DNA from: Macrostomum lignano
Taxonomy: Eukaryota
Direction: 5' to 3'
Assembly (NCBI GenBank): GCA_002269645.1
Contig: NIVC01001595.1
Location: 1-64,000, forward strand
Length of the DNA: 64,000 nucleotides
Shown: positions 12,700 through 51,907 of the stretch, in pieces
Layout of the letters: the number at the start of each line of letters is the position of its first letter
Position numbering within the stretch: position 1 is the first letter of the stretch
Notes under the pieces: generated by a model
What the model was told of the DNA's origin: nothing
The model's database searches: none
Seen by the model: only the letters and a program-made list of their open reading frames with translations
Made by a program: the position numbers and the translations under genes

Positions 12700-14705
12700 A
12701 TGAACTTCAGAAAGCTTAGAAAAACATCATTGGCCAAAACTACTCCAACAGTTCAATATTTGGTAAGAGTTTTTATAGGCTATATGTTTAAAATATTTTG
12801 AATGGCATTGATTGTGAAAAATCTTTGTGCAATATAAAAGTGATTGATTTTTTGCTTGCTTTGTAAAATATTTATAAAGGTTCACATTATTTCAGGTTTT
12901 AATTTTTAAGGTGTTTAATTTTTTATACAAAATTCCCTTCATGGTCCTTGAAATCTAAGCAATTCTCTCCACAAGCTTTGAAGTCTTAGAAATTTTTTTC
13001 ATAAGCCTTGAAATATTAGCAATTCCCCCATGAACCTTAAGCCTAAGCATTTCAGCAACTCCATGATGAGCCTTGACATCTCAAGTGATTCTCACCACTA
13101 GAATTTGACATGTCAGCAATTCTCCCCCCCAAGAGCCAAAGCATTTCAGAAATTTAGAGTACATTTATCCAAGCTTGTGATATGCTGTTATACAATTGTA
13201 TATTTTTCCACTAATCATAACTAGGTGCAACCAGGGGACACTCTGTGCAGCCTCGCTGTCCGATTCAACACCAGCACTGGCTGCCTGCGCTCACTGAACT
13301 ACCGTGTCGGCTCCGAGCTGCCTCTGCTGCCTGGCACAGTGCTGAATGTGCCAGCTCCAGCTGTGGAGCCGCTTCCAGCGCAGGTTTGTCGGATTAGATT
13401 GTGGATTAGCTTCAGCCTAACCTATCACTAACTATGGTTTCTACAAGGACTAATCAAATTTAATAACACACTTGATTGAAAGTCCCAATCGATGTTTAGC
13501 CAGGCTATAAAGGTGGGTAAAAAATGCAAACTTTTAAAAGATTTTCAGTTTCTATTGTATTAAGTGATGTTTCGAAGTTTTTCTATTAAGAAGGTGTTCA
13601 ATATTCTTTGGCAAGTAAAGGTCCACTGAAAACGGCACAATATCGCACTGCTAGACATCAATTGAGCTGTAAGAGTCGCACAGCTGATTTACAAAGCGAC
13701 GAAAAAATTTCAAGTCGTGTGATCACGCAAATTCGCTAGTTGTCTAGTCACTTCGAATTTTCCGGTATCTTCCGGTATCAGCAGCAAAAATACTTAAAGA
13801 GGACCTTTCAAAGTGAAATTTATCCATCGTCTTTATCTGTCAATCTTCAGAATGGGTCACCCAACGGACTGCAGCGTGAAAATAGCCAGCCAGATCATCC
13901 AAATGTCCAAAGCGATGAGCAGAACACTTCGCAACAGGCTGCTGAACTTTTTAATCTGCCATTAGCAGAGCTTCAGTGTCCTCGGCTGCGCCACTCACCC
14001 GAGTCACTCACAGAGCAGTACTGGTCGATAATCTCCCAGCCAGACTCCCTGGACGATGACTGGACATTTCTCGATCCAGACGCTGAGCAGCGAATCCAAC
14101 CAGGTCGATCCAGTCTCCCACTTCCTCGCCTTTTGGTGCCGAAATACGCGCCTTCCGAAGATCCAACGCCCGAAGCTTGCTTGCCAGACGAGCTTCTCCT
14201 GACGTCCAGTCGTCTGCGCAGTCTTGTAGAAGTGCTCCCGCCGCGGGCCGAAGGTCTCGACCTCTGCCTCCTGTTCAGCACCAGACGACACGGTCACTCA
14301 TTGCGCTCTCTTTACGAGCTGTCGCACTCAGTCCAGCTGGATCCCGCAACCTGCTGCCTGTTGTTGGCATCAGTTGCCAATAGCGACACTCTGCTGGGCG
14401 CATTTCTGCCTTGCCCGCTGCGTCTACCGTCGAACGGTTGCTATGGTACCGGGGAGACTATGCTGTTGCGTTGGTTTGACAATGATTTCAAAGTCTATCA
14501 GGCCACTAACACTGATGGTTTGTTTTTGCGCAGCTCGCGTCACAGCCTGTCGGTTGGCGCAGGAGCGCTGACGCTGAGAGCAGATCTGCTGTCGGGCTGC
14601 TCGGAGTCAAGCGAAACGTTCAACTCGCCTGCACTGATTGACGGCTCAGAGTTCGCGTTGGGCAGCGTGCAGCTGTGGGCATTTCAAGTTTTTGACAAAG
14701 ACTAA
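12700..14705 (+). CDS. LysM + TLDc domain protein (OXR1/NCOA7 family-like), ~358 aa
   Basis: Exons 12700-12762, 13225-13383 and 13851-14705, all phase 0. The first junction rebuilds a LysM start (TVQYL|VQPGDTLCSLAVRFN). C-terminal TLDc motifs: LLFSTRRHGHSLRSLY, LLGAF, YGTGETML, SETFNSPAL, QLWAF. The start codon is tentative. Confidence 0.88.
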
Positions 14706-20598: not shown

Positions 20599-23500
20599 CA
20601 GCCATGGGCACCAACTGATCCAACGAGTAAGCCACCCGTAGTTTGTCCTCGCCAGCAAGCTTGGCAGATCCACGCAACAGTTGAATCCGCGCAGCCGAAG
20701 CGACAGTTGCAGTCTCAAAGTTAATTAACGCCAAACGACCATCTGAGGCCATACTAAGGCGTTTTGCTTTCAATCCATTATCGGCTAGAAACTTGAGCAG
20801 AGTGGATTTCTTTGTGCCCTGCAGTAAGTTGGCTACAATCAGTCTGGATTTCGTTCCACTCCGTTGCATTTCGCTATCATTTGATGAAGCCACCTTCCGG
20901 TGCCCGTAGGTCACCGTGGGCCAGTCGGGGTCCTCGGCAGCGGCTGGCCAAGCGGCCAAATCGGCTGCGCATGCGGCTTCGGTCTCGTAGGCGGCCACGG
21001 CAACACCGGAGCCGCGACGCTCCAATTTGGTGCAGCGGGACAGGGCGAGCAGCAGACGGGAGTCGGTCATGGCTTTGTTGACGCCTGTCAGCACCAGGGT
21101 GCGCCTGTCAACCTGTGTCGGGAATGACATTGTGGGCGGCAGGTTTTATAAAATTACTGAAAGCTCATAAAGAATTGTATCTGGGGTTGTAGCCTAGTGG
21201 TCACGACTTGAAGGTCGGGGGTTCGTTTCCCGATCCTACTCGGAACAATTTGTGTCCTTGAGCAAGACACTTAACTCTGCATTGCTTTAGTTCACCCCAG
21301 CTGTAAAATGGGTGCCAGCATTAGCTGGGGTAATTGAGGCTGTGTGTGGCGACCCCCCCCCCTCCCAGTCCTTGGACTGTACAGCCGTGCACAGCCTTCA
21401 GATGCGCCGCGCAATAGCTGCGGCTGAGCTGTCGGTTGCACATCTGCCCAATAAGGCAGGTGTAATCAATTATAATTATTACTATTACTACAATACCTAA
21501 CGCCAAAACCTGCACTTCTGAAGCTTTATTCGCAACTTATCTAAATAAGACACAATTGAGACTCTGAAGACACTTTCTACAAGCAGAAAGTCACAGATTG
21601 ACACAGAGAGTACTTCACAGCCAAATTTAGACACTTGAGCATTAAAATAAGCACTAACCAGATGCTTAGGCTTCGGTTTGCCAGGAATTTTCTCCAGCAT
21701 CCACGAAGTCTTGCCGCCGCCAACAACGGCGCCCTGACAGCTGAGCACGGCGTCTAAAGCTTGACGCGCATCGGCAAAGGTGATTACGGCGACGTTTGGC
21801 GCGTGTCGTCCCCTACCAGCGCCGGCGCCAGCTTCCGGGAAGCGAACTCGCTGAGCGCCCGGGGCCAGCTCCAACAGCTGACTAGCGGCGATGCGACCCT
21901 CCAGAGAGGAGACAACAACGCGGCGAGTATTGTACTGGCTGGCAGATATGGAGTCCGGCTGAACCGGCGGAATTGAGGTCGCGAGTTCGCGCGCTCCGCC
22001 TAGAGCTCGACTGCCCTGTTATTGGTTTGGTTGAATAAGGCATCCTGAATAGTTAACGCTGGTACTAAGACGTTTCAACTAATAGACAATTCCTGAGAAA
22101 AACTGTATAAAAATACATTAAGAATTTTTCTACTAACAGTAGTATTATTTGACATTTTGACAGACCAATAGCAGGGAAGTGTACTAATTTGTACTAAGTC
22201 TACTACAAAACAAGAGCAAGAAACTGCGTGGATTACCATTTATTATTAGCCAAATATAATGTTGGAGCCCAAATAGTTCTGGAGACCCCAGCTAATGCTG
22301 GCACCTATTTTACAGTTGGGTGAACTGGCAATGCAGGCAGAGTTAAGTGTTTTGCTAAAAGATACAATTTTTTATTTATCGTATCTCCATAGTGCTTTCA
22401 GGAAATTTCGTTTTTGACGCATGATATCTATAGGGTTTTGCATCGCTTCTTATAGATAAAAAACTGAAGTTAAAGCTTGAAGTTAGCCAGAAGCAACACA
22501 ATTCAGTTGAATCCGCACACACACTCACCTGCAGAACAGCCGCATGCTTCGCAGCAATCTCTGGATTGGCAAATTCGAGAAAGGCGACACCTTTATGGCG
22601 GCACCGAGCCCGGTTCCACGGCAGCCGGGCGGCCACAGCCGACGGGCACAGGGCGTACAGGTCAGCTAGTCGGCAGCGATTCGGTAGCGGACGAATTCGC
22701 ACTGTGCTGCGAAGTCGGCGAGTCACGCAGTCAACAATGGCCTTATCTAGACTCGAATTGTCAACTGACTCAGCTTGATTCGTAGCTGCTGGCAATGCTG
22801 CGGCGACAGGCTGCTATGGAAATCAATCGAAATTGAACAGTTTTCAGGCCTTGAATAATGATCGGCTGTCACGAGTGGCTGAGATCGCTCAATATTCTAT
22901 GGCCTAAACAAGTCCCGCGATCATTGCGCACCGCTTAGAATTGTCTCAAAGGATTGGCCAGAGACAATTTTAGAGCTTGGATAGAAAGACTAAAGTGAAG
23001 AGTTAGAGGCTATATGGTCGACCATAAGGCAGGGCCTTAAGGCAGGTTTTCTAAGGCAGGGCCAGATTATACGCATATTTTATATTTACATGTATGTACG
23101 AACATATTCTCAATTGCCTAGTGTATTTATCGTCACTTCTGTTTTGTCTATGGTTGAAATGCACGTTGGAAGCCTGGAATAATGGCGTTCCTTGGACAAT
23201 AATTAAGGCTCGGGTAGGCCATGTCTTGTGCCTAAAACCATTAAAAAATGGCACAGCTCGGCTCATTGGCTTTATGAATCTATTATCATTCTTAGCTAAC
23301 TGCCTAACAAAATGTGTGACAGAGATGATAAGAAAGTTTAACAAAACCAAAGAGTCGAGCTGTGCCATGCGTTTTTATGATTTTTAGATACAAGAAATTT
23401 ACATAGATTAAAATTGGGTCTGCCACCAATCGAAATCAATAAAAATTTTTGGGCTAAAAAGGAAAACTTTCTATTTCCATAGTGTATTTTTTGGCAAAAA

Positions 23501-39700: not shown

Positions 39701-42700
39701 CAGTTGGCAGAGGTAAATAGGAATGATAAAAGATTACAGAAAATGCTGAGACAAATCTGGTGTGTTTTACCTTTCGGAAAATCTGAAATTGTATGCGTTG
39801 TTTGATAAAGTGTACGACTAGAATTGTCTTTAATGTTTCGCCACCCCTACCTTTTTGTAATTTTGTTTTGTAAAAACATATCAATCAACCTCGATCAAAT
39901 TCAATTACTCTGGAGTGTTCATACTTGCACAGTCGTAGCGTGTGACTATAGTGTAGTACGCTTAATCTCACTGTCCTACCATCTCACTCCCACTGAATCT
40001 AAAATGTACACTGGGCAACCACCTCACTCCCACGGAATATAAAATGTACACTGAGCCAATCACCTCGCTCCCACTGAATCTACACTGGGCCAACCACCTC
40101 ACTCCCACAGAATCTAAACTGTACACTGGGCCAACCACCTCACTCCCACAGAATCTAAAATGGACACTGGGCCAACCACCTCACTGCCACTGAATCTAAA
40201 ATGTACACTGGGCCAACCACCTCACTTCCACTGAATCTAAAATGTACACTGGGCCAACCACCTCACTTCCACTGAATCTAAAATGTACACTGGGCCAACC
40301 ACCTCACTTCCACAGAATCTAAAATGGACACTGTGCCAACCACCTCACTGCCACTGAATCTAAAATGGACACTGTGCCAACCACCTCACTGCCACTGAAT
40401 CTAAAATGGACACTGGGCCAACCACCTCACTGCCACTGAATCTAAAATGGACACTGGGCCAACCACCTCACTGCCACTGAATCTAAAATGGACACTGGGC
40501 CAACCACCTCACTGCCACTGAATCTAAAATGGACGCTGGGCCAACCACCTCACTGCCACTGAATCTATAATGTACACTGGGCCAACCACCTCACTCCCAC
40601 AGGATCTAAAATGGACACTGGGCCAACCACCTCACTGCCACTGAATCTGCAATGAACATTTGGTCAAGCACCTTTCTCCCGCTGAATCTAAAATTTACAC
40701 TGAAACAAGCAACTCATCCCCACTCAACCATTTCCTTGAATGTACGCAGGGCTTGAACTGCGCAATTTGCAAACTAAGCCAACCTCCAAAATTTTAATAA
40801 AATCCATTTTTAGGTGGATGTAAATAAAAAAGTGATTTTCTAAGACAACCTAAAACTTACCTCGAGTCCTTCCAGAAACTCTTCTCGCGTCACCGACATG
40901 CTTCGATCTTTGTCAAAGGTGTTAAAAAAATCGATCATCTTCATACCGCGTTTCTCAACAAAGTTTCTCAGCTTCATCATTGGATGCACTTTGGCCTTCT
41001 CGCGATGCGGCACCTTGACACCGACTTCCACCTTGAGCTCAGGCATTGTCTCCAGGAGTTGATGGTGCAGATCCTTGAAGTCGTCGTTAACCATGATGTC
41101 CTGCATTATATTTTTTTCATTAATCATCTTTATTTAACATTTAGCATGCCAAGAACTATAGATAAAAAAGCTTGTATAATTTTAGACTACTTTTAGTAAG
41201 AGGACGCAAGCTGAGACCCGAACGTCTCAGACCCGAACCTACATGTATGAATTTAATACGGCCGTAACTGCTAGTTATGGTGCAGCTAAACATTCGTGTC
41301 TCGCTCAAAAAGTTAAAGCGAAATTGGATTTATCTATTTAATTGCTACGAAGTTCCGAAAAAAACACGGAATGTGCCGACGGTATAAAAATAATAAACCT
41401 TCGTTTCAAGGGGGTTTTGAGACCACTGGATCAAAGCCTTCGGCGACATCGTCCCACTACCAGAGGCTATAATCTAGCCATTTCGATTACTTCTGAGCAC
41501 ATTCATACAGCTTGGTATTGTACGCAGACACGCGCTCGCACAGGGCTTAAAGTGCACTTATTTTATAATCACTATGCTATAGGAAGTCATATAAATAACA
41601 GTAATAATAATTGGCTACACCTGCCCCAATTGGGCCAGATGTGCAGCCGACAGCTCAGCCGCAGCTATTGCGCGGCGCATCTGAAGGCTGCGTACGGCTG
41701 TTCAGTCCAAGGACTGGGGGGGGGTCACCACACACAGCCTCAATTACCCCAGCTAATGCTGGCACCCATTTTACAGCTGGGTGAACTGAAACATGAGTTA
41801 AGTGTCTTGCTCAAGGACACAAGGACACACCCCGACCTTCAAGTCGTGAGCCCGACGCTCTAACCACTAGGCTTCAACCTCCTAGGAAGTCAGCATGTAA
41901 ACTCTCTGCGCCACCAGGGTTTGCCTTCATGGATGTGAATTGCATGACGGCATAAAAGACAATTCACCGGCACTTACACAAGCCCCGATTCGAATTGACG
42001 TGGCTGAGCACAGATTTCATATCTCGGACACTTAATATCTCGGACACTTAATATCTCGGACACTTAATATCTCGGACACTTAATATCTCGGACACTTAAT
42101 ATCTCGGACACTTAATATCTCGGACACTTAATATCTCGGACACTTAATATCTCGGACACTTAATATCTCGGACACTTAATATCTCGGACACTTAATATCT
42201 CGGACACTTAATATCTCGGACACTTAATATCACGGACACTTAATATCTCGGACATTTAATATCTCGGACACTTAATATCTCGGACACTTAATATCTCGGA
42301 CACTTAATATCTCGGACACTTAATATCCCGGACACTCAATATCTCGGACATTTCATATCTAGGACACTTCATATCTCGGACACTTCATAACTCGGACACT
42401 TCATAGCTCGGACACTTTATAACTCGGGCACTTCATATCTCCGAAATTTCATATTCATTTGTATAGAATGCAGGTGATACCGCAAATTGTTCAGAAATCG
42501 CATGTGACTCTAATTGCACAGACTGTTTGCCCCAATTTAGCTGGCATCGCCGAAATATGTTGAAAACGTTTTTTAACCTAATTGTTAAGAAGGAATACCG
42601 CAGTACAAGACAGCAAGCTTAGCTTGGATTTGTGAAGGTTGAAACAGTAGTTCTCTAAATACGAGCGTACCACCCCTATAGCTACTCAGCAGTATGCTTC

Positions 42701-43020: not shown

Positions 43021-43061
<41 letters not shown>

Positions 43062-46000
43062 GGTGCAGATTTTACAATGCACCTGAAGCACGAAAGCATT
43101 CTCTCAACAAATTGCACAGTCGAGCAGCGATAGAGAATGGGTTTTAGACACAATAGATTGGTCTAAAGCTCGAAAAAATTGGTAGCTTTTATCTGCCGGA
43201 TTTTTCGCCAGTCGAGAAGGGACCGCGAGTTGGGAGGGGTTAAAAGGGCTGCTTTAGCTACTCAGCATGCGTTCGTGCCGCCGACACGGGAAGCCTATTC
43301 TATAGAGTTGAATAGCCGGCCCTCGGAGCGTCTGAGCCACAGAGCCAGAGACAGAGGGCAGAGTGAGCAAGCCATCTTTTATAAAGAGTCGCATTTCTAA
43401 CAGAAGCGGTACAGAGCAAAGCTGCTACCGCAATTTAGAAGATGGATCGTTCGAAGCGATCAGCCCAGGAGGCTGGACGGCGTGGTCGGGTTATCCTGAC
43501 CAGCGACCCGCTGCTGCGGGCCTTCTATGAGAACAATGTGGAGCGCATGGGCGCCATCATTCGCGAGGACCCAGCCGAGCTAGAACGCTTGCTAGACCAG
43601 GTGCATCCGTTGGCCTGTCTGGCAGCTAAGGAAGACCGAGATGATGTACTGGGGCTGGTGAACTCACTCGGTGGTAGGCTCGATCTGCGCAATGCCGAAC
43701 AGATGACGCCGTTGCATTTGGCCGTGATGCACGGCTGTATGAAGGCTACTAATTTTCTCACCTACCTAAAGAGTAGCGACCTGAACGAGCCGTATCCGAA
43801 TGGTGACTACCTACTGCACAGGGCGTGCGTCACTGGGCAGCCCGAGCTGGTGCTGCAGCTCATGCGAGTTGGCGCCGATCCCAATAAGACAAATGCTCAG
43901 GGCCTGTTGCCGCTGCACAAAGCCTGCGAGGAGGAAAGCGTCGCCATGGCAGCCGCTTTGCTGCCTAAGACCGAGAACGTGAACGTGGCCGGGCAGCAGG
44001 GTCGAACTGCGCTGCATATTGCGGCTGCCAACCAGTCGCTTGCCCTCATCAAGCTGCTGTTGGCCTACAATGCCGACATTGACAAATACGACCGCAACAA
44101 GGAGTCGCCAATGGACATCATCATCCAAATGGGCAACAAGAACATCCTGGTTGGTCTTGCCAACTTCCTTGATCGTTCAGTCACGGGAAGCTTCCTCTCG
44201 TTCAAAGAGCTGGACGATAACGCCGAGTTTTCAAGTGTCCTTCGCTTCATCGAAGCCATAGACAACGAAATCACGCATCCGACAGCGGCTAAGAAGTTGG
44301 AGGTGCCCGAAGAAGAGGCCTCAAGAATTATCGGCCGAATCGCGACCGAGGAGAAGACGGATTTTATGGAGTTTCGCTCAATGCTCAAGACAATCGCCTA
44401 TGGTGGTCTCTCGCAGAGGATTATTGATCACAAGATTGTTGACAAACTTGCCGTTGCCGTCTGCAAGCAAGTCCTATTTCGTGAGGATGCCGAAATGCTG
44501 CGATTAATTGTCTACAACACCGGATTGTGGCCCGCCATCCGCTCCGCTCTGGAAGAGGATGTGTTCATACTGTATGAGACCTGCCAAGAAATCGGCTCGA
44601 CCGGCATGGTTGGCCTCATTAAGCACGAAACCTTCGACACGGAGGACGAGATGAACATTGAAGATTTCTGTCGCTTTGTCGCTCAGGTATCCAATCTGCC
44701 AGCGTTGGACATGAGCAGAGAAAAGGAACGGGACGAGTTTCTAAAGGACCCGCTGCAGTCACTGACTCTCTGGTCGATTCTGACTGGCCGCTTTGATCTT
44801 ACAGAAGATCTGCTGAAAACCGAACAATTCGACATTATCCCAATGGGCTTAATGTGTGCGGGAATTCTGCGCAACATCCGCTTCCGACCGGAGATTCCGT
44901 CGCCAACAAAGAAAATCATGGAAAACGTTGCTGACAAATGCGAGAGCGTTGCTGTGAAACTACTGCGAAGCATCACCGAGTACGACACATCCGATAACAA
45001 AGTGGTCAGTATCCAGTACATGCGCTGCCCGTTGCATCCCTACAGCAACAAATCTGCTATTGATCTGGCTGCATCTGGTCAATCGGAATCGTTCATCACT
45101 ATGCCGAGTGTACAAAGCGCCCTCGACATGGAGTGGTACGACCGCCTGTACAAGCTGCCCTGGCTGCTGCGCCAGTTTCTTGTGCTGATGGCCCTCATTC
45201 CCTACAACCCAATTGTGGCGTTCATTCTCATCCGGCTAGAGAAGAAGAAGGCAGAGGAGCGCCGGTCTAAAGCCGCCACCGAAGAGGAGGAAGAAGATAA
45301 AGAAGTGAATTTGCTAATATTTATAATGCTTGTGAAGTTCCTGATCTATTTAACGCGTATTTTTCGATATTTTCCACGAAATTACGGCTCGTAATTCATT
45401 TTCTTTCCAGGTAATCGGCGTTACCCTGGGTTCTGAAGCGCGCAAGCGCAATACAAAGGACAAAAAGGACGAGGATAGAGTCGGTGCAACCGACCGGCGC
45501 AAGAAGATGCGCCGTCACCTAACTATGCAGCAGTCGGAGGAGGCCCTGACAGATGACAAGCCTGACCAACAGCAGGCGGACATGGAGTTGGCGCGTATGG
45601 ACTCACGCTCCACGCTACTCTCCACGGACAGAAAGAGCCGTGGTAGACCCGGACGCTCCGACGAAGAGCCAACAAAGGCCGAGAACATTTTTAAGCAGTC
45701 TTTTGACGCTATGAACAAACTGTACAACACGCCGTGCGTTAAGTTCCGCTTTCACGTCATGTCTCACATCATCTTCGTCCTTATCTTCTCAATTGTGATG
45801 GTCGCCCAGTTTCGCTACCATCCAACGCCGCTAGAGATAATCGTTTATCTGTTTCTGTGCGGCTTTCTGTTAGAAGAGTTGCGCGAAGCTAACATGGCTT
45901 TAAACTCGGGAACAATGTCGGAATACATATCGGACGGTTGGAACATCATCGATAACACAGCCATCCTATTGGGCCTTGCTGGATTTGTGCTACGTTTGTT

Positions 46001-49000
46001 CCGTATCAACACAAAGATGACGACAAGTGATCTTTACACTTTCACTGACAGCTTCTGGTGGTGCGCTCACCTCACTTTGGCTCTCAGCTGCCTGCTGTTC
46101 TGGATTCGATTGCTCTACATCAGTACGGTGCTTGAGAGCCTGGGCCCGAAGCTGAAGATGATCTATATCATGATCATACGCGATTTCCTACCGTTTCTCA
46201 TCATCTTGTCCATCGTGATGTTCGGCTTCGGCATAGCTATTCACGGCCTACTGTTCCCTAACGGCTACGCCAAAGACAACAAGGTTCCATTGAGCGGCGC
46301 CGAGATCTTCCAGCGGATGTTCAAGATCACCTTCTACGCCATGGTTGGTGACTACTCGCTGGATCTGATCCAAGGCAGCGATTGCAACAATGAGACAACT
46401 ACTAAACCGTGCCCCCATCCGCTCGGAAAGATTGTGGTGCTCAACATGATCATGGTGATTTACATCGTTATCACTAGCGTCCTGCTGCTAAACCTCATCA
46501 TCTCGCTGTTCAGCAAAACAGTCGAAGAGGTCGACAGTAAATCGTTCGCCCTGTGGCAGTTCGAGCGTTACAACTTGGTGCACGAGTTCCACATCCGGTT
46601 TCCGCTGCCACCGCCGTTGAACATCCTTGGAAGCGTCTTCAAACGAATCAGCGGTATCTTCCTGCGGTTCAAAGCCCGCGGCAGGCAGGACAGCCAGAAG
46701 TTGACTCGCGGCTTTGAGAAGGCCTCCGTGTTCCACTTCCTGCTCTATCAGGCGTTTAGTCTCCGAAGGAAGCGCAAATACCTTGAGGGCGACGTGGAGA
46801 TCGAAGACATTGACAAGATCATCGGCGAGATCAACACCAACGTGAAGCTGATGAACACCGAGATCGGCAACCTCACCAGGAAGGTGGCCGAGCAGCGAGA
46901 TGAGTGCGAAGAAGATGAAGATTGATTGGCTGTTTCGAATCAAACTGAGGACCATATTAATGGATTATTCAGATTTTGATGTTTCAGTAGCTACAGTTAA
47001 AACTCTCACATCAGAAAAAAGTCGCAAAACTTATATTCGATTTTTTACTTTGTAATAATTTTTCGCAAACTTTTACTATACTCATTTTGTTTAGTTTATA
47101 TTAACAACTCGTATAGTTAATTAAACTGACTCGTACTTGTACGCCACGTGGTAGCCCTATTGCTGTTGAACTCTGCATATTCATAAGATGATATTTTTAG
47201 ACGTAATTATTTAAACAAAATAAATTCTACAATTGCATCATCCTGTTTTAAGCTGAAATTGGCCAATAAATTAAGCTCATTAGAAGCTATGGAATTAGTA
47301 GGATCGCAGCGTTTGTACATGAATTACTAATTTTTGACAACAATTTAATAATATCGTACGAGCGTAATTCTCTTGCTCACCTGAAAGTCTAGCAGACAGA
47401 TCTGCGACTGTGGATTCTTGGAAACGGCAGTTAGAATTGCATAACAACCGGAAGTTTGCATCGGATTTCGGCCCATCTGACGAAAAGTGATATCGGTTTT
47501 GTCAATGCTAGATTAATTTTTTTATTTTCCTTACATTTTTACTAAAATCTTTACAAGTTGTCACTCTGTTTGCACTCTGTCACTCCTCAACCTACTCACA
47601 TCTCTGTCTGTCACTCACCAACCTGCTCACATCTCTGTCTGTCACTCACCAACCTGCTCACATCTCTGTCTGTCACTCACCAACCTGCTCACATCTCTGT
47701 CTGTCACTCATTAACCTGCTCACATCTCTGTCTGTCACTCATTAACCTGCTCACATCTCTGTCTGTCACTCATCAAACTGCTCACATCTCTGTCTGTCAC
47801 TCACCAACCTGCTCACATCTCTGTCTGTCACTCATCAAACTGCTCACATCTCTGTCTGTCACTCATCAAACTACTCACATCTCTGTCTGTCACTCACTAA
47901 CATGCTCACATCTCTGTCTGTCACTCACCAACCTGCTCACATCTCTGTCTGTCACTCACTAACATGCTCACATCTCTGTCTGTCACTCATCAAACTGCTC
48001 ACAACTCTGTCTGTCACTCATCAAACTGCTTAAAACTGTCACTTCAAATACGAGTTTGCCACCCAGAACTCACCCGCAGAACCTTGAGCGTACTATTTAA
48101 TGTAAGTCCCTTTCCAAACAGTACGGCGCCTTCAGTAGTGATTCGATTGTTCCTGAAAGCAAATCAGATGTTTGAACCAACTGACTAGATCTAACAACTT
48201 CTTGATGGAGTTCTTGCACAATATATTGCATTCAACAAACATTTTCTGTGCAGAAATCAAGATTATTTTGTTCAACAAATAAAAAACTAGACAAAACAAT
48301 TTAGCTCATACTTTAACTAAATTCAACGATCTCATATGCCTACTGAGAGAGTAGAAAAGTAAGTAAAATTATATGTATTATGCTTGTACACGCGTGTACA
48401 ATATTCATTTTGGGAGGCCGTCCGAGCAACTGAGGATCTGGGAGGCTGGCTGCCCAGCAACTGAGGATCTGGGAGGCTGGCTGCCCAGCAACTGAGGATC
48501 TGGGAGGCTGACCCAGCAACTGAGGATCTGGGAGGCTGGCCCAGCAACTGACACTCTGGGAGGCTGGCCCAGCAACTGACACTCTGGGAGGCTGGCCCAG
48601 CAACTGAGGATCCGGAAGGCTGGCCTAGCAACTGAGGATCTTGGAGGCTGGCTCAGCAACTGAGGATCCGGGAGGCTGGCCTAGCAACTGAGGATCTTGG
48701 AGGCTGGCTCAGCAACTGAGGATCCGGGAGGCTGGCCAGGCAACTGACAACAATTGAGGATCTGGAAGGAACTCAAGCTAAGTGTGGTAGAAAGCACTCA
48801 CGACAGGTTGAGCTCCTCCAGACAGGTATTGACTTTGATGGCTTTGCTAAGCTCCTGAAGGCCGTAGGTGGGTCCGAAGCCGTTGAAACTCAGGTCCAGC
48901 ACTTTCAGCCCGTTGTTTGCCTGAACAGTAGGAAGTTGTTCAAGTTAATTACACTCATCACAATGAAACATGAAGTTTGCTATTTGCCCCTCGCTACTCA

Positions 49001-51907
49001 ACACCTTAATTAGTAGTTGATGCCAAGCCAACTCACCGCAAGCCCTTCGGCGACGCCCTTGGCGCCTTTGGCTCGGATGTGATTCCAGCTGAGATTGAGC
49101 TCGAGCAGGCTGCTGTTCTCCATCAGAGCTTTGCCGATGGTGAAGCCGCCCAACTCGGCGAAGTTGTTCTGCGACAGATCCAGCCGGTGCAGAGTGGCCG
49201 TGTTCTGCCGGAGTGGGCCGCGTTTGGGATTCGGGCATATTTTGCGATTTGGGATCTTCGGGTTTGGGATTCAAGGATGACTTGGGATTTGAGGAGGGTT
49301 TAGGATTTGAGGAGGGTTTAAGATTCGAGAAAGGTCTGGGATGTGGGGAGGGCTTGGGATTTAAGTAGGGTTTGGGATTTGGGAAGGGTTTGATATTTGG
49401 GAAGGTCTTGGGATTTGGGAAGCGTTTGGAATTTAGGAAGAGTTTGGGATTTGGGAAGAGTTTGGGATTTGGAAGGATTTGGGATTCAGGAAGAGTTTGG
49501 GATTTGGGAGGATTTGGGATTTGGAAGGATTTGGGATTCAGGAAGAGTTTGGGATTTGGAAGGATTTGGGATTCAGGAAGAGTTTAGGATTCAGGAAGAG
49601 TTTGGGATTTGGAAGGATTTGGGATTCAGGAAGAGTTTAGGATTCAGGAAGAGTTTGGGATTTGGAAGGATTTGGGATTCAGGAAGAGTTTGGGATTTGG
49701 AAGGATTTGGAATTCAGGAAGAGTTTGGGATTTGGGAAGAGTTTGGGATTTGGGAGGATTTGGGATTCAGGAAGAGTTTGGGATTCAATGATGATTTGGG
49801 GTTTGGGATTTGGGAAGGGTACCCGAAGAAAGTATCTGAAGGAGTGCAGATTTAAATGGCTTGAATCTTAAAGAATCTTAATAGGATTGAGATCGGAATG
49901 AAGGATAACTAGGGATATTCAAGGATTGGGGATTTAGAAGCTATCAGCCATCCCAAGCCTCTCACGGTGATCAGATCCGCAAAGAACTGGCTGCTCCTGT
50001 CATCAAATTCGTTGCCGCGCAGGCAGACGCTGGTCACCTGCGTGTTGGCCATGAGAACCTCGCACAGCTGCTTGGCAACATCCAGGCCCATTTTATTATC
50101 AGCCAGATTCAGCTCAGTGATGAAGCAGTTCTCGCGCAGCATGTGCACCACCTGCAGGCCACCGGCCGCTCCAAGCCAGTTGTCGCCGAGGTCCAGTTTA
50201 GTCACGGTGGAGTTCGAGGCCAGCGAAGCGCACAGCGGCTTGATGCCGCCGGTGCCCAGGCCGTGGTGCCGCATGTCGAGCTCCGAGTCGGCGATGTGGC
50301 GCAGATAGTAGCTGGCCGGGACCACGCCAGCCGATTTGCACAGGTCGATGTACAGAGTGCGGCCTGAGTGGTCGTAGGCCGCGTGCTCGGCTGTGGATTA
50401 CGATTTAAGGTTCGGGAGTTCCTGATATAAAGAGGATTTGGGTAAGAAAGACAGAGAGGAGAATGACAAGGAGCGAGGGAGTAGTAGAATGAGTAGAGAG
50501 TGATCTCTTCATCCTTTTCTCACAAAGTTTATAGCGACAGCGACAGCAAAATCAACAGAACTGATTACACCCGCCCCAATTAGGCCACATCTGCAACCGA
50601 CAGCTCAGCCGCAGCTATTGCGCGGCGCATCTGAAGGCTGCGTACGGCTGTTCAGTCCAAGAACTTGGGGGTCACCACACCCACCCTCAATTACCCCAGC
50701 TAATGCTGGTACCCACCCATTTTACCTATGTTTCTTGCTCAAGGACACAAATTTTTCCACTGGGAATTGGGAATCGAACTCCCGACCTTTGAGTCCCGAG
50801 TTCGACGCTTTAACCACTGGGCTGCAACCCCAGCCTAACAAACACAGCCTGTCAACGAGTTACCAGCCGCTCTGAGCCAGATCTGTAAAACTGGGCATTT
50901 TTTTCATTTTTCGCTCCTCATCGGTTGAGAAGTTTTTGTCTATCAGATACGGAAATTTCTAGAGATAAAGTTAAACACAGCCAAAGTTATAAGCAATCAA
51001 AGCCAAAGAGATCTTTCTGGATGACATGATTATAAGGAGAGAAGCCGAGAGAGGGTAGTGAGGAGAATGGAAGAGGTAAGATGGGCTGGAGAGAGTAAAA
51101 AAGGTAAACTTTGAAATAATTCAGAATACACAGTGGGAGAAACCTTGTACAAGAAAAATACATTTTTGAACATAAGAATAATATTGTAAAAACTTCGACA
51201 AAAATAAGTAAGGATCATCGTCATCGTGTTTAATAATCGAAAATATTAAATACGCAAAGAATTCTACCAAATCGATTGAAATACTATAGCGATTATTGAG
51301 TCTTTATCCAATATAAAATAATTTTTAAACATGAAGGTGCATTGTGCAAAATAGTTTCGATGTGACTTTAGCAGAATGCAAAATAAATTTGTGCATGGTG
51401 AAGGTGTGCATTACAAGTATATTTAAGTCAAATTTTGATAAATTCAATAATAAAAGCAGGAGACAACATGGCACCTTTTAAGATCATTTGTTGTCGCTTA
51501 ATTGAATAGGAAAAATCTATTTGAAAATACTTACGAACAACTCGGACTTGGGCTAGAAATTTTATGTTTGTTTTTCTTTTAGATTATCAAATTGACATCA
51601 TAGGGGAATATTGGATTTTAATTTGTTTCAAAATTTGAATGATTTTACCCCTGGACTTACTTTTCTCTTCCAGGTCGGTGTCATACCCGTTGTCATCGGC
51701 AATGTCGTCAAATGCAAATTCTTGATCCTCCTCAGGCGAAAGAACTGCTCCAACAGCCTGCGGCTTCTTGATGGACTTTCGGATCTGCTGCTCCTTTTGG
51801 ACTGCCTCGACCTCTGTGGACTCTTCAGCTTCAGCCTCGGGTTTAGAGCCTTCCCCACTGGCCTCCAGTGGGGCCTGCTTTTCTTCCTCTGGCATAGCAC
51901 TTTCCAT
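36757..51907 (-). CDS. LRRC74: LRRC74A/B-like leucine-rich repeat protein with C-terminal EF-hand pair, 506 aa
   Basis: Nine exons: 51907-51661, 50390-49966, 49204-49037, 48920-48802, 48152-48074, 47476-47381, 41100-40861, 39217-39132, 36817-36757. All GT-AG and phase-consistent (1521 nt). RNI-type LRRs (LDLGDNWLG, LNLADNKMG, LDLSQNNF, LNLSWNHIR, LDLSFNGFG); EF hands DKDRSMSVTREEF and DKDGDGEINYREM. Confidence 0.88.
37218..38440 (+). mobile_element. Internally deleted P-element-superfamily transposon carrying a pseudogenised transposase 3' end
   Basis: ~35-bp TIRs (cacagaatatacacagaatgctcaatca...) with the 8-bp duplication ACTAAACT at 37210-37217 and 38441-38448. Decayed motifs RGSFND, NSNCENDD, YIGGWLLFKL...CKCDECQQTL and IRLHRW resemble P/THAP9 transposase C-termini. 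Confidence 0.8.
39985..40720. repeat. 41-bp minisatellite, ~17 copies (intronic)
   Basis: Unit ctgaatctaaaatg(t/g)acactgggccaaccacctcact(c/g/t)cca. Confidence 0.96.
41593..41878 (-). mobile_element. CORE-like SINE
   Basis: Near-full reverse-complement copy with (AAT)n tail. Confidence 0.9.
42017..42445. repeat. 16-bp minisatellite, ~26 copies
   Basis: Unit atatctcggacactta, decaying at the right end. Confidence 0.96.
43024..43058. repeat. (GA)n microsatellite ~400 bp upstream of the channel ATG
   Basis: Direct reading. Confidence 0.95.
43442..46925 (+). CDS. Ankyrin-repeat TRPM-type (TRPM/TRPS-like) cation channel, 1125 aa
   Basis: Exons 43442-45304 and 45411-46925; the 106-nt phase-0 intron joins two long ORFs. 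About 6 ankyrin repeats, then TRPM-like motifs: LTLWSILTGRFDL, PCVKFRFH, RLLYISTVLESLGPKLKMI, YAMVGD, VLLLNLIISLF, WQFERYNLVHEF, LPPPLNIL, and a C-terminal coiled coil. Confidence 0.92.
47575..48030. repeat. 31-bp minisatellite, ~15 copies (intronic)
   Basis: Unit ctcacatctctgtctgtcactcaccaacctg. Confidence 0.95.
48420..48750. repeat. 27-29-bp minisatellite, ~12 copies (intronic)
   Basis: Unit gggaggctggcccagcaactgaggatct. Confidence 0.93.
49225..49815. repeat. G/T-rich degenerate tandem repeat (tttgggat-based, ~18/36-bp periodicity; intronic)
   Basis: Recurrent ggatttgggattcaggaagagtttgggattt. Confidence 0.93.
50561..50828 (-). mobile_element. CORE-like SINE (diverged copy)
   Basis: Same 3' half; B box reads as ggaatcgaactcccgacc on the + strand. 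Confidence 0.88.

What the first reader, a model, noticed from the sequence alone, without database searches (positions are those of the whole stretch)
43442..46925. Chimeric TRP channel: ankyrin-repeat N-terminus on a TRPM-type body, with no SLOG/MHR1-2 domain
Seen in sequence: about 6 ankyrin repeats start within ~30 aa of the Met. They are followed by an MHR4-like helical region, a TRPM-type S1-S6 and a TRP box (WQFERYNLVHEF..LPPP), then a short coiled coil. There is no kinase or NUDT9-H tail. The pore loop has two Cys and an N-glycan sequon (GSDCNNETTTKPCPHP). A ~120-aa highly charged insert precedes S1 and carries the only intron. Established knowledge: canonical TRPM channels lack ankyrin repeats, while TRPA/C/V/N have them. 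As I recall, some members of the TRPM sister family TRPS carry ankyrins, but alongside a SLOG domain. Inference: this may be an uncharacterised lineage-specific TRPM/TRPS derivative whose N-terminal sensor has been replaced by ankyrins.
Basis: partly seen in the sequence, partly recalled or inferred. Interest (0 to 1): 0.72.

Follow-up and report, generated by a model that had tools for sequence, protein, structure and literature searches.

The report
Flatworm ankyrin-headed TRPM-like channel gene

Summary
The gene has two exons (43442-45304 and 45411-46925) and encodes 1125 aa. The protein has about 6 ankyrin repeats, an MHR3/4-like helical region, a charged disordered insert, a TRPM-type S1-S6, a TRP box and a C-terminal helix. 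It has no SLOG, Nudix or kinase domain.

The product is 100% identical to a 'hypothetical protein' annotated in Macrostomum lignano. At least 13 divergent paralogue clusters in that species share the architecture. So do single-copy orthologues in trematodes, cestodes and monogeneans.

Those orthologues are TRPM_MCLZ. Accessions CAH8438365.1 and CAH8481013.1, named in Park et al. 2023, fall in this group. The literature describes TRPM_MCLZ as lacking MHR1/2/SLOG and carrying N-terminal ankyrin repeats, and as a Ca2+-entry channel activated by meclonazepam.

Profile searches in both directions, and a 200/200 bootstrap split on MHR4+TM+TRP, put the window protein with TRPM_MCLZ and away from all SLOG-bearing TRPMs. 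TRPA and TRPN are far more distant.

The claim that the kind is uncharacterised is wrong, and so is the recollection that TRPS channels carry ankyrins. Verdict: a new member of a known kind, of modest interest. The large expansion in a free-living flatworm, and the family's position relative to TRPS, remain open.

The parts
43442..45304 (+). Exon 1 (codons 1-621): start ATG, ankyrin array, MHR3/4-like region, and the start of the charged insert
   Evidence: ORF. An in-frame TAG lies 6 nt upstream of the ATG. The donor AAGAA|GTGAAT is at 45304/45305. The product is identical to the deposited 1125-aa protein.
45305..45410 (+). The only intron, 106 nt, GT..AG, phase 0
   Evidence: Sequence. Splicing restores one open frame of 1125 codons. 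Without splicing the frame stops at 45392-45394.
45411..46925 (+). Exon 2 (codons 622-1125 plus stop): rest of the charged insert, S1-S6, TRP helix, and C-terminal helices
   Evidence: tblastn of paralogues and TRPMs aligns here.
43502..44194 (+). Ankyrin-repeat array, residues 21-251. There are seven 33-residue units: five clear repeats with cap-like units at each end.
   Evidence: Pfam Ank_2/Ank/Ank_3/Ank_4/Ank_5 hits. 33-residue register and repeat HMM hits. Helix-pair pattern with pLDDT around 90.
44195..44695 (+). Helical linker between the ankyrins and the MHR4-like region (residues 252-418). It is conserved among the Macrostomum paralogues only and may be MHR3-like.
   Evidence: All-helical with high pLDDT. 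Profile positions 1-200 match only Macrostomum family members.
44696..45241 (+). MHR4-like / TRPM2-like domain and pre-S1 segment (residues 419-600), including the invariant W565
   Evidence: PF25508 match at 419-552. The alignment to nvTRPM2 structure 6co7 starts at residue 429. W565 is invariant in 50 sequences.
45242..45707 (+). Highly charged, disordered insert (residues 601-720). The genomic span includes the intron.
   Evidence: 49% charged. pLDDT below 50 for 623-687. It aligns poorly with the paralogues, and about 45 of its residues, starting at the exon-2 boundary, have no counterpart in them.
45732..46511 (+). S1-S6 transmembrane channel domain (residues 729-988), with VSLD residues E777, E780, N799, D802 and S4 residue Y857
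   Evidence: Ion_trans hit. All 60 listed PDB matches to the TM segment are TRPM. Helices in the model. Residue mapping.
46347..46418 (+). Outer pore loop between pore helix and S6 (residues 934-957): filter motif G934-D935, then C946, the sequon N948-E-T and C955
   Evidence: Alignment to nvTRPM2 'yGE..LD' and TRPM5 'pCP'. C946 invariant and C955 at least 90% conserved.
46521..46616 (+). TRP helix with the TRP box WQFERY (1003-1008) and the LPPP motif (1020-1023)
   Evidence: Aligns to WKFQRY..PPL of TRPM2/TRPM5. W1003, E1013, P1022 and P1023 are at least 90% conserved.
46809..46919 (+). C-terminal long helix (residues 1088-1124), a putative tetramerising coiled coil
   Evidence: Single 37-residue helix in the model. 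The coiled-coil role is inferred by analogy with TRPM structures.

Best explanation
The locus is an intact Macrostomum lignano gene for a TRPM-like cation channel of the flatworm-restricted ankyrin-headed group. The characterised member of that group is schistosome TRPM_MCLZ.

Shown:
- One exon encodes, without interruption, an ankyrin array followed by MHR3/4-like helical repeats.
- Exon 2 encodes a TRPM-type voltage-sensor-like domain, pore, TRP helix and terminal helix.
- The SLOG (MHR1/2), Nudix and kinase domains are absent.

Inferred:
- It assembles as a tetramer through the TM domain and the C-terminal helix.
- It conducts cations including Ca2+. The filter has an acidic residue (G-D), like the G-E of nvTRPM2, and Sm.TRPM_MCLZ mediates Ca2+ entry.
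- It is gated through the S1-S4/TRP-helix cavity.
- It retains the TRPM transmembrane Ca2+ site. E777, N799 and D802 are conserved and E780 replaces the Gln.
- The cytosolic ring that binds nucleotides in SLOG-bearing TRPMs is replaced by an ankyrin scaffold. Regulation is therefore likely to come from protein or lipid partners or from VSLD ligands, not from ADP-ribose.
- The family most likely arose once in an early rhabditophoran flatworm from a SLOG-bearing flatworm TRPM. It stayed single-copy in parasites and expanded to at least 13 divergent paralogue clusters in Macrostomum.

The natural activator is unknown.
For: - Gene structure and identity to the deposited protein.
- Domain content.
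- Body is TRPM-type: best solved-structure matches to the body are nvTRPM2 (135 bits over residues 429-1035) and TRPM8/2/3/5/4 (about 105-124 bits), against 44.5 bits for the NOMPC TM region. For the TM segment alone, all 60 listed PDB hits are TRPM.
- Exhaustive profile search without the ankyrins: full-length hits are Macrostomum paralogues plus Opisthorchis, Schistocephalus and Dicrocoelium proteins.
- Shared architecture: all seven proteins scanned with Pfam have Ank repeats and no SLOG domain. Six have Ion_trans (not P0132) and six have the TRPM2-like domain (not the Opisthorchis P0131). Among all 150 hits, the ANK-bearing ones have no SLOG, and no hit combines a full ankyrin array with SLOG (two SLOG proteins give one isolated repeat hit).
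- Link to TRPM_MCLZ: the Dicrocoelium orthologue group contains CAH8438365.1 and CAH8481013.1. These are the S. turkestanicum and S. bovis TRPM_MCLZ used in PMC10788528. Residue numbering reproduces the published H946, Y940 and F952.
- Reciprocal test: a TRPM_MCLZ-orthologue HMM scores the window protein's body at 293 bits, against at most 196 for any SLOG-TRPM.
- Phylogeny: NJ bootstrap on MHR4+TM+TRP gives {all ANK-type | all SLOG-TRPM} at 200/200. Flatworm SLOG-TRPMs are the next neighbours at 147/200.
- Shared pore-helix signature: F-Y-[SA]-[IM] in both ANK groups, against Y-[FWL]-[QH] in the four SLOG-TRPMs compared.
- Structure: AlphaFold model with pLDDT 82.6 and pTM 0.77 has an all-helical N-terminus with no alpha/beta SLOG fold. 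Foldseek top hits are TRPM2/5/4/8/3/7.
- Ca2+-site alignment to zebrafish TRPM5 E768/Q771/N794/D797.
- Function of the kind: Sm.TRPM_MCLZ gives Ca2+ entry and inward currents in HEK293 cells (PMC10788528).
Against: - With the TM-TRP region alone and a TRPN outgroup, the Macrostomum and neodermatan ANK groups form an exclusive clade in only 99/200 replicates. The outgroup joins Macrostomum in 55/200, so monophyly depends on the longer alignment and on rooting.
- The two ankyrin arrays resemble each other no more than generic ankyrins do (about 20-26 bits). A single acquisition is therefore inferred, not shown.
- No transcript, expression or functional data for this gene could be examined.
- The PF25508 hit is only 1.3 bits above its cut-off.
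- Only distance (NJ) trees could be built, and no TRPS or TRPC sequences were included.
Confidence: 0.88

Rival explanations
1. An ancient, separate TRP family. On this view the ankyrin-headed channels never had a SLOG domain and keep the ancestral ankyrin N-terminus of group-1 TRPs. They would branch below TRPM+TRPS and survive only in flatworms.
For: In the TM-only tree rooted with TRPN, both ANK groups sit at the base of all SLOG-TRPMs; the split {ANK groups + outgroup | rest} has 126/200 support. Himmel et al. infer that ankyrins were lost before the TRPM-TRPS split.
Against: - Every named member found among 1.84 billion representative proteins is a flatworm. This would require loss in every other sampled phylum.
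- Flatworm sequences are long-branched, and the basal position is what long-branch attraction would produce.
- With more columns, the nearest neighbours are flatworm SLOG-TRPMs (147/200).
- The proteins share the MHR4/TRPM2-like region with TRPM.
Confidence: 0.07
2. Convergence. Macrostomum and the parasitic flatworms each replaced SLOG with ankyrins independently, so the window gene only resembles TRPM_MCLZ.
For: The exclusive Macrostomum+Neodermata clade gets only about 50% support on the TM region. There is no specific similarity between the two ankyrin arrays, or in the linker at profile positions 1-200.
Against: The 200/200 split separates all ANK-type from all SLOG-type bodies. Profile scores are reciprocally best. 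The pore-helix signature is shared. Both genes are intron-poor, with 2 and 3 exons. Two independent identical domain swaps are less parsimonious than one.
Confidence: 0.05
3. Incomplete gene model. The real transcript has upstream exons that encode a SLOG domain.
For: An AG at 43437-43438, preceded by a T-rich run, lies just before the ATG and could be a cis- or trans-splice acceptor. No RNA data were available.
Against: - An in-frame TAG lies 6 nt upstream of the ATG.
- tblastn with six SLOG-TRPMs, three from Macrostomum and three from parasitic flukes, finds no SLOG-like coding sequence anywhere in the 64 kb.
- The 3.4 kb upstream holds two minisatellite arrays.
- The ten full-length paralogues analysed and the cDNA-cloned schistosome channel start with ankyrins and lack SLOG.
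- The deposited model has the same start.
Confidence: 0.02
4. A TRPN/TRPA/TRPC-family channel misread as TRPM.
For: It has an N-terminal ankyrin array. NOMPC is the top whole-protein PDB hit by summed ankyrin score and ranks 4th in Foldseek.
Against: The NOMPC TM region scores 44.5 bits against about 105-135 for TRPMs. A TM-TRP HMM detects TRPN only at 29-41 bits over S6-TRP. It misses ten of eleven TRPA1-type sequences and gives the eleventh a partial 13-bit match. TRPC was not tested directly, but no TRPC structure appears among the 60 best PDB matches.
Confidence: 0.01
5. A decaying or non-functional paralogue in a large expanded family.
For: Its closest paralogue is only 41% identical. It has a unique stretch of about 45 residues within the charged insert. 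No expression evidence was seen.
Against: The frame is open for 1125 codons. All residues that are at least 90% conserved across TRPM-type channels are retained: W565, P729, F733, E776/E777, W798/N799, G866, C946, C955, N982, W1003 and the PP motif. The model is confident.
Confidence: 0.05

Closest known systems
TRPM_MCLZ (Schistosoma mansoni Smp_333650 and its trematode, cestode and monogenean orthologues), the meclonazepam-activated 'TRPM-like' channel
   Same: - N-terminal ankyrin repeats in place of MHR1/2/SLOG, a TRPM-type VSLD, pore and TRP helix, and no Nudix or kinase tail.
- An intron-poor gene (2 exons here, 3 in S. mansoni).
- Reciprocal best profile matches, and a 200/200 split from SLOG-TRPMs.
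- A shared F-Y-[SA]-[IM] pore-helix motif.
- Conserved E/N/D Ca2+-site residues.
   Different: - Only about 22% identity overall.
- Shorter (1125 against about 1380 aa), with one compact ankyrin block where the parasite proteins have two ankyrin-scoring stretches about 70 profile positions apart.
- The linker between the ankyrins and MHR4 is not alignable.
- The filter is V-G-D, against I-F-E.
- The Gln of the Ca2+ site is Glu.
- The S4 position equivalent to H946 is Tyr (the low-sensitivity state) and the T1121 equivalent is Phe, so meclonazepam sensitivity is not expected.
- It is one of at least 13 divergent Macrostomum paralogue clusters, whereas only one orthologue per parasite species turned up here.
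Canonical TRPM channels (TRPM2/4/5/8-like, including flatworm TRPM_PZQ-type SLOG-TRPMs)
   Same: MHR4-like region, pre-S1, S1-S6, the pore-loop Cys pair with a sequon between them, the TRP box W-x-F-x-R-Y, the PPP motif, and a C-terminal helix. These are the best sequence and fold matches among solved structures.
   Different: There is no SLOG/MHR1-2 domain, so no N-terminal nucleotide site, and no Nudix domain. Bona fide 33-residue ankyrin repeats are present. A 2026 survey states that all TRPM/TRPS members have MHR1/2, MHR3 and MHR4 (PMC13143021), but that survey did not sample flatworms.
TRPS (soromelastatin; C. elegans ced-11 type)
   Same: A TRPM-like transmembrane body and TRP box 1.
   Different: TRPS channels carry SLOG and Nudix domains and have no detectable ankyrin repeats (PMC7306681). 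Phylogenetic position relative to TRPS could not be tested here.
TRPN (NOMPC) and TRPA1
   Same: An N-terminal ankyrin array ahead of a six-TM TRP channel.
   Different: The transmembrane similarity is weak or undetectable. There are far fewer repeats (about 6, against 29 in NOMPC as I recall, not tested here). An MHR4-like domain is present that these families lack.

Membership tests
TRPM (canonical melastatin family) | N-terminal MHR1/2 = SLOG (LSDAT_euk) domain | tested here: not met
   No PF18139/PF18171 hit. A local SLOG HMM is negative for this protein and all ANK-type relatives, but positive for nearly all full-length SLOG-TRPM hits. The model's N-terminus is all-helical. There is no SLOG coding sequence elsewhere in the window.
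TRPM (canonical melastatin family) | MHR3/MHR4 helical region before the pre-S1 | tested here: met
   PF25508 TRPM2-like match at 419-552, 28.3 bits against a cut-off of 27. The phmmer alignment to nvTRPM2 runs over 429-1035. Paralogues score 29-46 bits. MHR3 equivalence of residues 252-418 is not shown.
TRPM (canonical melastatin family) | TRPM-type S1-S6, pore-loop Cys pair, and TRP box followed by a PPP motif | tested here: met
TRPM (canonical melastatin family) | Absence of canonical ankyrin repeats | tested here: not met
   Five Pfam Ank families score 44-82 bits. 33-residue register.
TRPM_MCLZ-type ankyrin-headed TRPM-like channels of flatworms | Ankyrin repeats at the N-terminus and no MHR1/2/SLOG (as defined in PMC11731825 and PMC12861061) | tested here: met
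.
TRPM_MCLZ-type ankyrin-headed TRPM-like channels of flatworms | Channel body groups with named TRPM_MCLZ orthologues and not with SLOG-TRPMs | tested here: met
   Reciprocal profile ranking. 200/200 split on 492 columns. Accession identity with the published orthologues. Caveat: the TM-only tree with a TRPN root gives only 99/200 for an exclusive clade.
TRPM_MCLZ-type ankyrin-headed TRPM-like channels of flatworms | One-to-one orthology with Smp_333650 | tested here: inconclusive
   The Macrostomum sequences form their own 200/200 clade of at least 12 sequences. The window gene is therefore at best a co-orthologue (in-paralogue) of TRPM_MCLZ.
TRPM_MCLZ-type ankyrin-headed TRPM-like channels of flatworms | Activation by (S)-meclonazepam through the VSLD pocket | not testable with these tools
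   Sequence only. The position equivalent to Sm H946 is Y857, and the T1121 equivalent is F1018. Published H946Y mutants lose sensitivity, so low sensitivity is predicted.
TRPS (soromelastatin) | SLOG plus C-terminal Nudix (NUDT9H) domains | tested here: not met
   Neither domain is found. The protein ends in a helix at residue 1124.
TRPS (soromelastatin) | Phylogenetic placement in the ced-11 clade | not testable with these tools
   No TRPS sequence could be retrieved.
TRPN / TRPA | Transmembrane domain homologous to NOMPC or TRPA1 | tested here: not met
   NOMPC TM region scores 44.5 bits against about 105-135 for TRPMs. The TM HMM gives TRPN 29-41 bits, partial matches only. Ten of eleven TRPA1-type sequences are not detected at E <= 1e-3 and the eleventh gives a partial 13-bit match.

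The most novel reading that the evidence does not exclude
The ankyrin-headed flatworm channels, meaning this gene, its at least 13 Macrostomum paralogue clusters and TRPM_MCLZ, may not be degenerate TRPMs. They may be a distinct TRP lineage branching at or below the TRPM/TRPS split that kept the ancestral ankyrin N-terminus. Under the weaker version of this reading, they are a single ancient domain swap that free-living flatworms then expanded into a large, still unexplored sensory channel repertoire.
Probability: 0.1. Interest if true: 0.7.

Novelty: new member of a known kind. Interest (0 to 1): 0.3.

Why it matters
The architecture that looked chimeric is that of a validated anthelmintic target class. 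TRPM_MCLZ is the receptor for meclonazepam in schistosomes. Three points go beyond the papers read here.

- **Age of the family.** The family is not confined to parasites. It goes back at least to the common ancestor of Macrostomorpha and Neodermata.
- **Expansion in a free-living species.** Macrostomum lignano carries at least 13 paralogue clusters that differ by more than 50%, whereas only one orthologue per parasite species turned up here. M. lignano is transgenic-tractable and free-living, so it could be used to find the natural activators and physiological roles of this channel type.
- **Gap in the evolutionary surveys.** Himmel et al. 2020 and the 2026 MBE survey of TRPM/TRPS did not sample flatworms. 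They state that TRPM and TRPS lack ankyrins and that all members have the complete melastatin region. This family is a clear exception that should enter those schemes.

For this particular gene the result is mostly tidy annotation. A 'hypothetical protein' can be named a TRPM_MCLZ-like, ankyrin-repeat TRPM-like cation channel.

Tried and rejected
- **Whole-protein homologue search.** It was swamped by generic ankyrin proteins. It was useful only for identifying the organism and one paralogue. I repeated it without the ankyrins.
- **Upstream SLOG exon.** tblastn with three mollusc TRPMs and six flatworm SLOG-TRPMs (three from Macrostomum, three from flukes) found only the TM region of this gene. 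An 11-residue match of the SLOG 'GTGRAAD' motif at 21025-21057 has E = 2.4 and I treat it as chance.
- **TRPA/TRPN as the source of the body.** Rejected on scores.
- **Biopython NJ with bootstraps.** It timed out and was replaced by a numpy NJ.
- **TM-only tree with a TRPN root.** It gave an ambiguous basal arrangement: Macrostomum+Neodermata 99/200, Macrostomum+outgroup 55/200. I read this as long-branch attraction, because the 492-column alignment gives a 200/200 ANK|SLOG split. I could not run ML or Bayesian methods.
- **Obtaining TRPS sequences.** The supplements of PMC7306681 and PMC13143021 hold no sequences as text.
- **Identifying unnamed relatives.** I tried to identify the organisms behind P0134/P0136 (Logan DRR639838) and P0141/P0157 (MetaClust). 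Only a run accession was obtained.
- **Specific homology between the two ankyrin arrays.** Scores are no better than for generic ankyrins.
- **Neighbouring ORFs.** A Pfam scan of ten other large ORFs in the window found nothing related to the channel.

Full report
**What is there**

The + strand carries two long ORFs, 43442..45394 and 45507..46925. A 106-nt intron joins them. Its donor is AAGAA|GTGAAT at 45304/45305 and its acceptor is ttttctttccag|GT at 45410/45411. Exon 1 is exactly 621 codons, and the spliced CDS is 3378 nt = 1125 aa plus stop. An in-frame TAG lies 6 nt upstream of the ATG.

The product is 100% identical, end to end, to the deposited 'hypothetical protein BOX15_Mlig012389g1 [Macrostomum lignano]'. 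The window is therefore from this free-living flatworm, and the public model uses the same start and splice sites.

**Checking the observation**

- Pfam finds five ankyrin families over about residues 60-237. It also finds PF25508 (TRPM2-like, the MHR region) at 419-552, just above threshold, and Ion_trans at 739-998. There is no SLOG/LSDAT, Nudix or kinase hit.
- The N-terminus falls into an exact 33-residue register from residue 21/54 to 251.
- The segment 601-720 is 49% charged. It contains the intron, and residues 623-687 are predicted disordered.
- The TRP box WQFERY, the LPPP motif, and the pore loop with C946, N948-E-T and C955 are all present. C946 is invariant and C955 is at least 90% conserved in a 50-sequence TRPM-type alignment.

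**What the body is**

- Against all PDB chains, the body matches Nematostella TRPM2 over residues 429-1035 (135 bits) and TRPM8/2/3/5/4 at about 105-124 bits. The NOMPC transmembrane region gives only 44.5 bits.
- With the TM segment alone, all 60 listed PDB matches are TRPM.
- A TM-TRP HMM detects TRPN only partially, at 29-41 bits. It misses ten of eleven TRPA1-type sequences and gives the eleventh a partial 13-bit match.
- An AlphaFold2 model (pLDDT 82.6, pTM 0.77) has an all-helical N-terminal half with no alpha/beta SLOG fold. Its Foldseek hits are TRPM2, TRPM5, TRPM4, TRPM8, TRPM3 and TRPM7, with NOMPC at rank 4 because of the ankyrins.

**Could a SLOG exon be missing?**

tblastn with mollusc TRPMs and with six flatworm SLOG-bearing TRPMs, three of them from Macrostomum, finds only the TM region of this gene in the 64 kb. 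The 3.4 kb upstream of the ATG includes two minisatellite arrays. The ankyrin-to-MHR4 junction lies inside one uninterrupted exon, so it cannot be an assembly or splicing artefact.

**Relatives**

An exhaustive profile search with the ankyrins removed (alignment A2) gave 941 proteins at E <= 1e-10.

- The full-length top hits are further M. lignano proteins, plus Opisthorchis, Schistocephalus and Dicrocoelium proteins.
- All seven scanned with Pfam have Ank repeats and no SLOG domain. Six have Ion_trans (not P0132) and six have the TRPM2-like domain (not the Opisthorchis P0131).
- Local HMMs over all 150 listed hits give a clean dichotomy. ANK-bearing hits lack SLOG, and from P0143 downward nearly all full-length hits have SLOG and no ankyrin array.
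- Macrostomum has at least 13 clusters of this type at the 50% identity level. The closest paralogue to the window protein is 41% identical.

**It is already known as a kind**

- Park et al. (J Biol Chem 2023, PMC10788528) cloned the S. mansoni channel TRPM_MCLZ (Smp_333650). [quoted passage not shown] They showed meclonazepam-evoked Ca2+ entry and inward currents in HEK293 cells.
- Sprague et al. (PMC11731825) state that it 'lacks the NH2-terminal MHR1/2 or SLOG domain', and that its N-terminus instead contains ankyrin-repeat-like modules.
- A 2026 paper calls the group 'TRPM-like' for this reason (PMC12861061).
- The Dicrocoelium hit's orthologue group contains CAH8438365.1 and CAH8481013.1. 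These are the exact accessions Park et al. used for S. turkestanicum and S. bovis TRPM_MCLZ.
- My alignment reproduces the published residue numbers: H946 (checked in S. guineensis, 1380 aa), Y940 in S. turkestanicum and F952 in Echinococcus.

**Is the window gene in that family?**

- Forward search: TRPM_MCLZ orthologues are the best non-Macrostomum matches (about 270 bits, against at most 246 for the next-best proteins).
- Reverse search: an HMM of eleven neodermatan orthologues scores the window protein's body at 293 bits and other Macrostomum ANK-type bodies up to 304. The best SLOG-TRPM scores at most 196.
- NJ with 200 bootstraps on the TM-TRP region (295 columns, TRPN outgroup): each ANK group is recovered at 200/200. 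The two form an exclusive clade in only 99/200 replicates, and the outgroup is pulled to the Macrostomum clade in 55/200.
- On MHR4+TM+TRP (492 columns, 101 taxa): the split {all ANK-type | all SLOG-TRPM} is 200/200. The next neighbours are flatworm TRPM2/PZQ-like SLOG-TRPMs at 147/200.
- Both ANK groups share the pore-helix motif F-Y-[SA]-[IM], where the four SLOG-TRPMs compared have Y-[FWL]-[QH].

I conclude that the gene is a Macrostomum in-paralogue of the TRPM_MCLZ lineage. The limits are that only distance trees were possible and that no TRPS or TRPC sequences could be included.

**How it most likely works**

*Shown:* domain order, conserved residues and fold.

*Inferred:*
- It forms a tetrameric cation channel.
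- The residues that form the transmembrane Ca2+ site of TRPM2/4/5/8 are retained, with one change. P0001 E777, E780, N799 and D802 align with zebrafish TRPM5 E768, Q771, N794 and D797, so the Gln is replaced by Glu. That those TRPM5 residues form the Ca2+ site is established knowledge. D797 and Q771 mutants also appear among the PDB titles.
- The filter has G-D, comparable to the G-E of nvTRPM2. Sm.TRPM_MCLZ mediates Ca2+ entry. Ca2+ permeability is therefore likely.
- With no SLOG or Nudix domain, ADP-ribose or nucleotide control is unlikely. The ankyrin ring probably acts as a scaffold or partner-binding module.
- The S4 position that sets meclonazepam sensitivity is Tyr (Y857), the low-sensitivity state, and the T1121 equivalent is Phe. 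I predict poor meclonazepam sensitivity.
- The natural stimulus is unknown.

**Comparison with the evolutionary literature**

Himmel et al. 2020 found no ankyrin repeats in TRPM or TRPS. The 2026 MBE survey states that all TRPM/TRPS members contain MHR1/2, MHR3 and MHR4, but it sampled no flatworms. The flatworm ANK-type is thus a documented exception in the parasitology literature that the evolutionary surveys have not absorbed. I found no mention of free-living members or of the Macrostomum expansion in the TRPM_MCLZ papers.

**Verdict**

The gene is a new member of a known kind.

Noticed in passing
window 40000-40702, 42019-42441, 47576-48030, 48411-48747, 49262-49805: The channel gene is flanked on both sides by minisatellite arrays with periods of 41/123, 16, 31, 28 and 18/35/53 nt, 10 to 30 copies each, at 74-95% match. 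Several of them produce long spurious ORFs.
   Followed up: partly
window 43033-43060: A (GA)n microsatellite of about 28 nt lies about 380 nt upstream of the start codon.
   Followed up: no
window 13740-14702 (+): An ORF of 321 aa has a clear TLDc domain (PF07534, 78 bits). It is probably an exon of an unrelated OXR1/NCOA7/TBC1D24-like gene.
   Followed up: no
window 43437-43441: An AG preceded by a T-rich run sits 3 nt before the ATG. It could be the spliced-leader trans-splice acceptor or a 5'-UTR intron acceptor. This could not be tested without RNA data.
   Followed up: no
protein P0131 (Opisthorchis viverrini KER32702.1, 1906 aa): This public gene model carries two Ion_trans stretches, while another protein in its cluster (O. 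felineus) is 1321 aa. It looks like two tandem channel genes fused by annotation, which may mean a local duplication of TRPM_MCLZ in Opisthorchis.
   Followed up: no
proteins P0134/P0136 (Logan run DRR639838; locus L001 1001-4219) and P0141/P0157 (MetaClust): Unnamed TRPM-like sequences group with the neodermatan TRPM_MCLZ clade at 191/200 and 166/200. P0136 clearly carries ankyrin repeats, while my repeat HMM found none or only one in the other three. Their source organisms could not be identified, so the true taxonomic range of the family is not fixed.
   Followed up: partly
window 45411-45545 (residues 622 to about 666): The first 45 or so residues encoded by exon 2 have no counterpart in any paralogue. 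They start exactly at the splice junction and lie in the disordered insert, so an alternative downstream acceptor or isoform is conceivable.
   Followed up: no
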